A stretch of 63,509 nucleotides of DNA, the filler included, from Octopus bimaculoides (lineage: Eukaryota): the NCBI RefSeq assembly GCF_001194135.2. It is 6 parts of 3 records of this genome, joined end to end, with 100 filler letters (N's around TTAATTAATTAA, not from the genome) between each part and the next. Parts side by side here need not be neighbours in the genome. Positions count along the whole stretch, not along the records: positions 27,478 to 41,902 come from NC_069002.1; 5 more parts are not named here. One strand, given 5' to 3'. The notes under the pieces were generated by a model, which did not search any database, had not been told where the DNA came from, and saw only the letters and a program-made list of their open reading frames with translations. The position numbers and the translations under genes were made by a program. The stretch's first letter is position 1. Every line of letters starts with the position of its first letter. Shown one piece after another: positions 29,971 to 30,633 of this stretch.

Positions 29971-30132
29971 TTACTCGAAATAGCAGTCCTCAACTTCAAG
30001 ACGGTTCTTCATAGTGTCCCAGGGAAGATCTTCGAATACCTTCTTCATCTTGACCGCCTGTCCCGCCTTGGTGTTGCAGGAAGAGAGGTTGGTAAGTTTC
30101 TCAATCATGCCGCATACATCATCATCATCCAT
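29971..30132 (-). CDS. Candidate small ORF or terminal exon, 53 aa: MDDDDVCGMIEKLTNLSSCNTKAGQAVKMKKVFEDLPWDTMKNRLEVEDCYFE
   Basis: Below the ORF-track cutoff and read by hand. About 33 of 53 codons end in G/C in an AT-rich background. The frame is open upstream to a TGA at 30193-30195, and there is a possible acceptor (gatttcaccag). No family recognised. Confidence 0.45.
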   Translation of the reverse strand: MDDDDVCGMIEKLTNLSSCNTKAGQAVKMKKVFEDLPWDTMKNRLEVEDCYFE

Positions 30133-30633
30133 CGAGTTGCAATCGGGGTCAATGAAGGAGCCAGAAATTGAGTCTGGTGAAATCGTAGGAATTCACGAGT
30201 CTCTTCCTGCTGTCCGCAGCCTCGTAGTCTCCGTTCCACCTGTCCCTGTTACGTCTTGCAGTTACACTTGAAAAGGAAAATGGGATTAGAGGGGCAAGTT
30301 TTGCCTTCCAGTAAATTTTTCGGAAGGTGGGTGCATGTAGCGAGGATGGCCCGTGTGAATGGACCTAATCTGAAATTTCGTTTGTAAACTGGAAGAATTA
30401 AGAAAGGGAGGGCGCCTGCTGAGCCGCTTCTGGCAGTTGAGATAACCAGAAAGTTCTGCAGTTGTTCCTGTAAGGAACTAACCCCTTTTGCGGAATTATT
30501 ATTGTTTAATTGTCTTGTTAATTGTTCTTTGTTACTTACTGTATACACGGCATTGTTCAACGCCGCACTTGTCCCTTGTGTTGTATTGTCCCTATTCGTT
30601 TTGTGTTCGGCTCTTGTGCTCAATAACGAAACG

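What the first reader, a model, noticed from the sequence alone, without database searches (positions are those of the whole stretch)
29971..30395. Coding-like island in three successive frames, each offset by +1 near a stop codon, ending in an unlisted 53-aa ORF
Seen on the - strand: a GC/CpG-rich unique segment shows G/C-ending codon bias in frame 1 (...GPFTRAILATCTHLPKNLLEGKTCPSNPIFLFKCNCKT*, TAA ending at 30249; about 21/38 codons). The bias continues in the +1 frame (ARRNRDRWNGDYEAADSRKRLVNSYDFTRLNFWLLH*, TGA at 30151-30149; about 24/36). It continues again in the next +1 frame (SGSFIDPDCNSMDDDDVCG...EDCYFE*, TAA at 29973-29971; about 33/53 from the ATG). These are hand counts. Both junctions read NNN-stop-C (AAG ACG TAA C; CTT CAT TGA C). 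A strong acceptor (ccctttcttaattcttccag) lies just upstream at about 30390, and an AATAAA lies about 0.9 kb downstream (29035-29030). Inference: this could be a micropeptide gene with stacked uORFs or reinitiation, a gene decoded by +1 frameshifting (precedent: antizyme UCC-UGA and prfB CUU-UGA, although these sites do not match those motifs), a young pseudogene, or two 1-bp assembly errors.
Basis: partly seen in the sequence, partly recalled or inferred. Interest (0 to 1): 0.72.

Follow-up and report, generated by a model that had tools for sequence, protein, structure and literature searches.

The report
Decayed transposon copy, not a frameshift gene
The "three-frame coding island" is a broken, untranscribed leftover of a Tc1/mariner-type "cut-and-paste" transposon lying next to an unrelated high-copy repeat, so it is ordinary genomic debris and not a gene decoded by frameshifting.

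Summary
Both junctions are real DNA, because four independent runs hold an identical 503-nt contig across them.

- **Frames 2 and 3** are remnants of one transposase gene of a Tc1/mariner family with DD37D (maT-type) spacing. This copy is 5'-truncated and lacks about 600 nt of its core.
- **Junction 2** is a net 1-nt insertion inside the codons for W-P-P-N-S-P-D. The TGA sits where three related copies have a Ser codon. Those copies and more than ten related proteins read straight through.
- **Junction 1** is not a frame change. Its TAA is an off-frame reading of AGA CGT AAC (R-R-N) in the transposase's own frame, and a relative carries the same letters.
- **Frame 1**, upstream of 30261, lies in a different repeat present at about 200 times single-copy depth, and it has no significant codon bias.
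- **The 53-aa ORF** starts at the conserved Met of NPMDYYVWG and ends at the ancestral stop codon.
- **Transcription:** no RNA reads cover the island.

Interest is low.

The parts
30262..30633 (.). The middle part, about 30405-30494, is specific to this locus. An (ATT)n run follows at 30634.
   Evidence: Summed contig depth is about 12,000 against 59 for single copy at 30338-30361, and about 10,400 at 30578-30601. Depth is single copy at 30410-30457. Joints in relatives connect 30358-30404 directly to 30485-30528. Relatives of this block have different sequence to the left of 30265. There is no similarity to the transposon relatives L001, L003 or L004. GC3 is 21/38, p = 0.24. No Pfam hit at E<=0.1 (one chance-level match, SDH_alpha, E = 0.16) and no tRNA-like head.
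30199..30261 (-). The copy is 5'-truncated at 30261.
   Evidence: Window 30256-30225 matches L003 545-576 at 84% identity, score 39 against shuffles 15.9 +/- 2.3. The peptide RRNRDRWNGDY aligns with L003 RRNVDSCNGNY, and 0 of 1000 shuffles reach that score. Relatives in the same genome cross this block without gaps (30199-30262). They continue on both sides with sequence that matches L003, not the window (loose ends; L003 sequence).
30249..30251 (-). The TAA of 'junction 1'. It is an off-frame reading of AGA CGT AAC (R-R-N) in the transposase's own frame. It is not a lesion and not a shift site.
   Evidence: The sequence itself. L003 carries the same AGACGTAAC letters. The true frame (frame 0) runs through this point without a stop.
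30195..30198 (-). Breakpoint of an internal deletion of about 600 nt. The deletion removed most of the transposase core, including the first and second catalytic D.
   Evidence: Relatives of the upstream block stop fitting at 30199, and relatives of the downstream block start at 30194. Their loose ends read ...SGKSQKWLSEN|SYDF and ACAGCAGGCGTTCTGACTGCG..., and both match positions in L003 about 600 nt apart.
30152..30194 (-). It corresponds to ...ENFYDFTSPNVWPPN... between the second and third catalytic residues.
   Evidence: tblastn against P0026 gives NFYDFTRLNFWL at 92% identity, E = 6e-4. Hits to P0013 (E = 0.004) and P0009 are colinear with the frame-3 hit.
30145..30151 (-). 'Junction 2': the TGA stop plus a net 1-nt insertion in the codons for P-P-N-S-P. 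One small lesion cluster both creates the stop and moves the ORF into the next frame.
   Evidence: The window reads TGG CTC CTT CAT TGA C CCC GAT. L004 reads TGG CCT CCT AAT TCC CCC GAT. L003 and L001 also lack the extra base. Ten related proteins in alignment A5 read P-N-S-P-D (or a one-residue variant) with no stop at this point.
29974..30147 (-). It includes the third catalytic D position, with a 3-nt insertion and an in-frame deletion of about 33 nt near 30004-30008. The ATG of the 53-aa ORF (30132-30130) is the conserved Met of NPMDYYVWG.
   Evidence: tblastn of 30147-30004 against P0009 gives 58% identity, E = 4e-13, and against P0007 E = 1.5e-11. P0003 gives 60% identity, E = 4e-13. The L001 read-through match over 30126-29953 (E = 4e-13) shows an 11-residue gap. 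DNA alignment A4.
29971..29973 (-). Ancestral stop codon of the transposase gene.
   Evidence: L004 has TTTGAG TAA ACTGTTATC at the same place, and related proteins end in ...GGYFE.
29849..29970 (-). 3' non-coding end of the transposon, running to ...TATGCAAACTGTCAAATTTAG. A CA/TA microsatellite follows.
   Evidence: This stretch is homologous to L001 621-686 and L003 1440-1535, and similarity ends at the shared AAATTTAG.

Best explanation
The island is a dead copy of a DNA ('cut-and-paste') transposon of the Tc1/mariner superfamily. Its family has DD37D (maT-type) catalytic spacing. The copy sits on the - strand at about 30261-29849 and abuts an unrelated high-copy short repeat at 30262-30633.

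The copy carries these lesions:
- It is 5'-truncated.
- It has lost about 600 nt of its core.
- It has a net 1-nt insertion that creates the TGA and moves the remaining ORF into the next frame.
- It has a 3-nt insertion.
- It has an in-frame deletion of about 33 nt.

The residual G/C-ending codon bias in frames 2 and 3 is what remains of the old transposase coding sequence. The 53-aa ORF is its C-terminal tail, from a conserved internal Met to the ancestral stop. Frame 1 is a chance open frame through the neighbouring repeat. Its terminal TAA is only an off-frame reading of the codons for R-R-N. Nothing here is decoded, and the locus does nothing beyond being repeat DNA.

Shown: the homology, the lesions, the repetitiveness, and the lack of RNA reads in the runs sampled. 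Inferred: the order of events, and that the copy cannot move because it has no 5' end and no catalytic core.
For: - **Relatives exist.** An exhaustive HMMER search with the frame-3 peptide found P0003, and a profile search found 26 relatives.
- **The window matches them in two colinear frames.** Window 30147-30004 matches P0009 at E = 4e-13, and 30208-30161 matches in the preceding frame.
- **The family is a Tc1/mariner transposase.** The family profile hits the Sleeping Beauty transposase catalytic domain 5cr4 at E = 5.9e-7, and SETMAR (the mariner-derived domain) weakly. Pfam DDE_3 is the only consistent family, at E = 3e-6 to 1e-3. UniRef names one relative 'Transposase'.
- **DD37D spacing.** Six relatives have 37 residues between the second and third D. 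This is the signature the literature gives for maT.
- **Homology extends past the coding sequence.** The related DNA copies L001, L003 and L004 share the ORF, the stop and about 120 nt of 3' non-coding sequence, and all lack the extra base at junction 2.
- **The N-terminal fragment and the deletion** are supported.
- **Repetitiveness** is shown.
- **No RNA.** Three RNA runs were each sampled at about 12 million reads (about 6% of each run). None gave a read on 29880-30503; the few RNA reads seen only partly fit the family-B repeat at about 30504-30581. No indexed RNA run holds the sequence's words.
Against: - The window's own peptides hit no Pfam, NCBIfam or PDB profile directly. The superfamily assignment therefore runs through relatives.
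- The Pfam DDE_3 scores of those relatives are just under the gathering threshold (27.6 against 28.6 bits at best), because the relatives are themselves fragments.
- Terminal inverted repeats and a TA target-site duplication could not be established.
- RNA sampling was shallow, covered few libraries, and the tissues are unknown.
Confidence: 0.94

Rival explanations
1. A host gene decoded by programmed +1 ribosomal frameshifting at the two NNN-stop-C sites, or a micropeptide gene with stacked uORFs and reinitiation.
For: Three open stretches lie in successive +1 frames, each ending at a stop followed by C. Frames 2 and 3 show a modest GC3 bias.
Against: - Junction 1 is not a frame change in the ancestral gene. 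Frame 1 belongs to another repeat and has no codon bias.
- At junction 2, relatives have an uninterrupted frame and a Ser codon where the window has TGA.
- The 'gene' lacks the catalytic core and the 5' end.
- No RNA evidence was found.
Confidence: 0.01
2. Two 1-bp assembly errors in an otherwise intact gene.
For: None beyond the pattern of +1 offsets.
Against: Four runs from four studies contain identical contigs across both junctions, with 0 differences and 0 gaps. Raw genomic reads show no variant. Even with junction 2 mended, the copy lacks about 600 nt of core and its 5' end.
Confidence: 0.01
3. A transposase-derived fragment that the host has co-opted, for example the 53-aa C-terminal peptide or a small-RNA source, and that is expressed in tissues or stages not sampled.
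For: The 53-aa ORF is intact from a conserved Met to the ancestral stop. Tc1/mariner domestication is known in other animals (title and abstract of PMC13548663).
Against: No RNA evidence. The ORF carries a 3-nt insertion and an 11-residue deletion, and conserved residues are substituted (WG to CG, YY to DD). An ORF of 53 codons is unremarkable in a recently dead coding sequence. Other species' runs share almost none of its words (0.04).
Confidence: 0.03

Closest known systems
[quoted passage not shown]
   Same: Relatives of the window copy have the Tc1/mariner catalytic-domain motifs (WQQDSAPCHTS ... WPPNSPDLNPMDY). They have exactly 37 residues between the second and third acidic residue, and the third is D. 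The profile matches the Sleeping Beauty catalytic domain. A longer related copy (L003) is about 1.1 kb, the size order described for maT at about 1.3 kb.
   Different: No phylogeny was made, so placement inside the maT clade, as opposed to another DDxD lineage, is not shown. TIRs and the TA duplication are not established. The window copy itself has lost the region that holds the first two catalytic residues.
Internally deleted, non-autonomous DNA-transposon copies (dead Tc1/mariner remnants, common in octopus genomes)
   Same: It keeps pieces of the 5' and 3' parts of the ORF, has a large internal deletion, and carries further small indels and substitutions. Tens of similar fragments lie elsewhere in the genome, several with other internal deletions (joints). 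Tc1-Mariner is the most family-rich TIR group among the recently active insertions reported for Octopus vulgaris, and SINEs make up 11.6% of that genome (PMC13282606).
   Different: This copy also lacks its 5' end, so it is not even a mobilisable MITE-like element.
Programmed +1 frameshift genes (antizyme, prfB)
   Same: Only the superficial layout is shared: an ORF ends at a stop and continues in the +1 frame.
   Different: No shift-site motif, no conservation of the stop in relatives, no transcript, and the upstream 'ORF' at junction 1 belongs to a different repeat.

Membership tests
Tc1/mariner (IS630-Tc1-mariner) superfamily transposon | A transposase with a DDE/D catalytic domain homologous to known Tc1/mariner transposases | tested here: met
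   The family profile A5 matches Sleeping Beauty SB100X (5cr4) at E = 5.9e-7 across the second-D to third-residue region. Pfam DDE_3 scores E = 3e-6 to 1e-3 in four relatives, just under the gathering score. The window copy matches those relatives at E = 4e-13. It retains only the part after the second D.
Tc1/mariner (IS630-Tc1-mariner) superfamily transposon | Terminal inverted repeats | tested here: inconclusive
   The window has only the 3' end. In L003 the best inverted pair is 23 nt at 78% (470-492 and 1471-1493), which is subterminal.
Tc1/mariner (IS630-Tc1-mariner) superfamily transposon | TA target-site duplication | tested here: inconclusive
   Shared similarity ends at ...AAATTTAG in the window, L001 and L003. 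A terminal TA is possible but not separable from the element. There is no 5' end to compare.
maT family (DD37D) | 37 residues between the second and third catalytic residues, with D as the third | tested here: met
   Counted in P0004, P0005, P0007, P0008, P0010 and P0013: 37 in every case. Register was checked against D244/E279 of Sleeping Beauty through the alignment. The feature definition comes from bioRxiv 10.1101/2022.10.13.512200. It cannot be checked in the window copy, where the second D is deleted.
maT family (DD37D) | Phylogenetic placement within the maT clade | not tested
Programmed +1 frameshift gene (antizyme or prfB type) | The in-frame stop and the two-frame arrangement are conserved in relatives | tested here: not met
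   Relatives read W-P-P-N-S-P-D straight through, with no stop and no extra base.
Programmed +1 frameshift gene (antizyme or prfB type) | The locus is transcribed as an mRNA | tested here: not met
   Three RNA-seq runs, each sampled at about 12 million reads, gave 0 reads on 29880-30503. A few partly fitting reads lie on the family-B repeat at about 30504-30581. No indexed RNA run holds its words. Sampling is limited.

The most novel reading that the evidence does not exclude
The surviving 53-codon tail of the transposase (30132-29971), or the fragment as a whole, is expressed in some unsampled tissue or stage as a transposon-derived micropeptide or small-RNA precursor.
Probability: 0.02. Interest if true: 0.3.

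Novelty: already known. Interest (0 to 1): 0.05.

Why it matters
It matters mainly as a negative result. A layout that looks like stacked +1 frameshifting (ORF, stop, C, next frame) arises trivially when a coding sequence dies. A 1-nt insertion produces an immediate stop in the old frame and an open continuation in the next frame, and a neighbouring repeat can supply a further chance ORF. Scans of repeat-rich genomes such as those of octopuses should check repetitiveness and transposase homology before treating such islands as recoding candidates. A minor by-product is that DD37D-type Tc1/mariner copies are present in tens of copies in this genome.

Tried and rejected
- **Direct profile searches of the window peptides and of fused read-throughs** gave nothing: Pfam, NCBIfam and a two-sequence PDB profile.
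- **Word-indexed protein searches** with the fused window peptide and with P0003 found nothing. Relatives only appeared after I built a probe alignment that included family consensus words read from loose ends of related contigs (one search timed out). That probe is partly composite, so I used it only to find proteins. All evidence cited is from comparing those proteins with the real window sequence.
- **A frame-2 reading I rejected.** I first read 30245-30200 in frame 2 (VERRLRGCGQQEE) as the 'GRPY-QQD' motif, which implied a 56-nt deletion. The longer relative L003 showed this block is the N-terminal RRNxDxxNGxY region in frame 0.
- **An apparent second fragment** (RNNCRTFWLSQL at 30469-30434 against KNACTKFWSQL, E = 4) was tested at the DNA level and is chance.
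- **The rest of the transposon's 5' part** was searched for elsewhere in the piece and not found.
- **A tRNA-like SINE head in family B** was searched for and not found.
- **Tool failures.** A 4.3-kb lay failed on a low-complexity filter.

Full report

Yes. The 53-aa ATG ORF at 30132-29971 is present too.

The hand counts of G/C-ending codons are correct. Tested against the local GC content, frame 1 is unremarkable (21/38, p = 0.24). Frames 2 and 3 are modestly biased (24/35, p = 0.03; 33/53, p = 0.02; 41/64 for the longer frame-3 stretch, p = 0.009).

Both junctions are real DNA and not assembly errors. Logan contigs of four runs from four studies contain an identical 503-nt contig over 29880-30364 with no differences or gaps. 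The few raw genomic reads sampled agree.

At 80-85% likeness, 285-370 contigs per run lie on 29880-30632. Summed depth is far above single copy in several blocks.

**2. What are frames 3 and 2?**

An exhaustive HMMER search with the frame-3 peptide found one true relative, P0003: 60% identity over 42 residues, pairwise E = 4e-13. Its contig, L001, aligns with the window through the ORF, past the stop, and through about 120 nt of non-coding sequence to a shared ...AAACTGYCAAATTTAG. That pattern is expected of copies of a mobile element.

A profile search then found 26 relatives. P0009 is an example...NLWPPNSPDCNPMDYYVWGAVEKDTNRSACNTKAELVAKIKEVFEDLPRDTVRDACARFRSRLEAVVEADGGHFE.

tblastn of these proteins against the piece gave two colinear matches in adjacent frames:
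- Window 30147-30004 (frame 3) matches P0009 residues 68-114 at 58% identity, E = 4e-13.
- Window 30208-30161 (frame 2) matches residues 48-63. P0026 matches NFYDFTRLNFWL at 92% identity, E = 6e-4.

**3. What family is it?**

The window peptides hit no curated profile directly. The family does:
- An alignment of 13 relatives (A5) matches the catalytic domain of Sleeping Beauty transposase (5cr4) at E = 5.9e-7, from the second catalytic D to the third residue. It also matches the mariner-derived SETMAR domain weakly, out to the terminal G-Y-F.
- Pfam DDE_3 is the only family hit consistently, at E = 3e-6 to 1e-3. This is just under the gathering score, and the relatives are fragments.
- One relative is named 'Transposase' by UniRef.
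- In six relatives there are exactly 37 residues between the D of WQQD and the D of NPMD. The literature gives DD37D as the signature of the maT family of Tc1/mariner (bioRxiv 10.1101/2022.10.13.512200).

I did not build a phylogeny, so 'maT-like' is a spacing-based assignment.

**4. Junction 2 explained**

Three related DNA copies (L001, L003, L004) read TGG CCT CCT AAT TCC CCC GAT, which encodes W-P-P-N-S-P-D. The window reads TGG CTC CTT CAT TGA C CCC GAT.

So there is a net 1-nt insertion within these codons. The TGA sits at the Ser codon, and the ORF continues one base later. The stop and the +1 continuation are two faces of the same small cluster of lesions, not a shift site.

Downstream the window also has a 3-nt insertion (MDDDDV where relatives have MDYYV) and an in-frame deletion of about 33 nt that removes ACxRFRSRLEA. 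The final TAA is the ancestral stop, identical in position to L004. The ATG of the 53-aa ORF is the conserved Met of NPMDYYVWG.

**5. Junction 1 explained**

Fine-scale laying of contigs shows separate repeated blocks at 30158-30194, 30199-30261 and 30262-30303. Relatives cross the TAA without gaps.

The longer relative L003 contains the block 30256-30225 at its positions 545-576: 84% identity, score 39 against 15.9 +/- 2.3 for shuffles. That is about 350 nt upstream of its 'FPDE' first-D region, within the same decayed ORF.

In the true frame the window reads TARRNRDRWNGDY, against L003 AIRRNVDSCNGNY. The 'TAA' is therefore only an off-frame reading of AGA CGT AAC, and L003 has the same letters.

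The loose ends of relatives beyond 30199 and before 30194 match L003 positions about 600 nt apart. So the window copy has an internal deletion of about 600 nt at 30199/30194, and this removed the first two catalytic residues.

Upstream of 30261 the relatives continue with CTGCTCAATGCTCTGTGAACACTGTAAAGG, as in L003, but the window does not. That sequence occurs nowhere else in the piece. The copy is 5'-truncated.

**6. Frame 1**

The stretch 30262-30633 is a different repeat. It reaches about 200 times single-copy depth at 30338-30361 and 30578-30601. Its middle, about 30405-30494, is specific to this locus, and relatives skip it.

It has no similarity to the transposon relatives, no protein-family hit at E<=0.1, no tRNA-like head and no codon bias. 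The proposed splice acceptor near 30390 lies inside it.

**7. Expression**

Three RNA-seq runs of the same species were each sampled at about 12 million reads, about 6% of each run. None gave a read on 29880-30503. Only a few partly fitting reads lie on the family-B repeat at about 30504-30581. None of the indexed RNA runs holds the island's words. Sampling is limited, but there is no positive evidence of transcription.

**8. Verdict**

The island is a dead maT-like Tc1/mariner copy that is 5'-truncated, internally deleted and frameshifted, lying beside an unrelated high-copy repeat. This is ordinary for a genome in which about 45-66% is repeats and Tc1-Mariner is the most family-rich TIR group (PMC13282606). 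Interest is low.

Noticed in passing
window 30634-31083: A 219-nt unit, made of 122 nt of unique sequence plus an (ATT)32 run, is tandemly duplicated 2.1 times at 100% identity directly beside the family-B repeat. This is either a very recent duplication or an assembly collapse or expansion at a microsatellite.
   Followed up: partly
window 29700-29848; L001 687-720; L003 1536-1700: In the window and in two related copies from other contigs, a CA/TA/TG microsatellite begins immediately after the shared transposon end ...AAATTTAG. The microsatellite may be part of the element's terminus or may be seeded by it. The true 3' boundary is therefore uncertain.
   Followed up: no
window 39667-39945, 40392-40673, 40935-41186 (- strand ORFs): Three copies of another short repeat lie next to (TTA)n or (ATT)n runs. 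Their translations share NSENSDGRNAAKHFxRRANDPASS. This looks like a SINE family that inserts at or carries ATT microsatellites.
   Followed up: no
window 28480-28870, 33521-33725, 35843-36330, 36898-37743: Four runs of N inside the piece, each flanked by TA, ATT, AG or CA microsatellites. These are assembly gaps at simple repeats.
   Followed up: no
window 28884-29056, 29614-29770, 32940-33038: Rfam matches well below gathering score to mir-297, mir-466, mir-3149 and similar families fall on TG/TA microsatellites. They are low-complexity artefacts, not miRNA genes.
   Followed up: partly
window 30405-30494: A segment of about 90 nt at single-copy depth lies inside the otherwise ~200-times-repeated family-B element. 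Relatives join its two flanks directly. Its origin (an insertion or a variable region) is unknown.
   Followed up: partly
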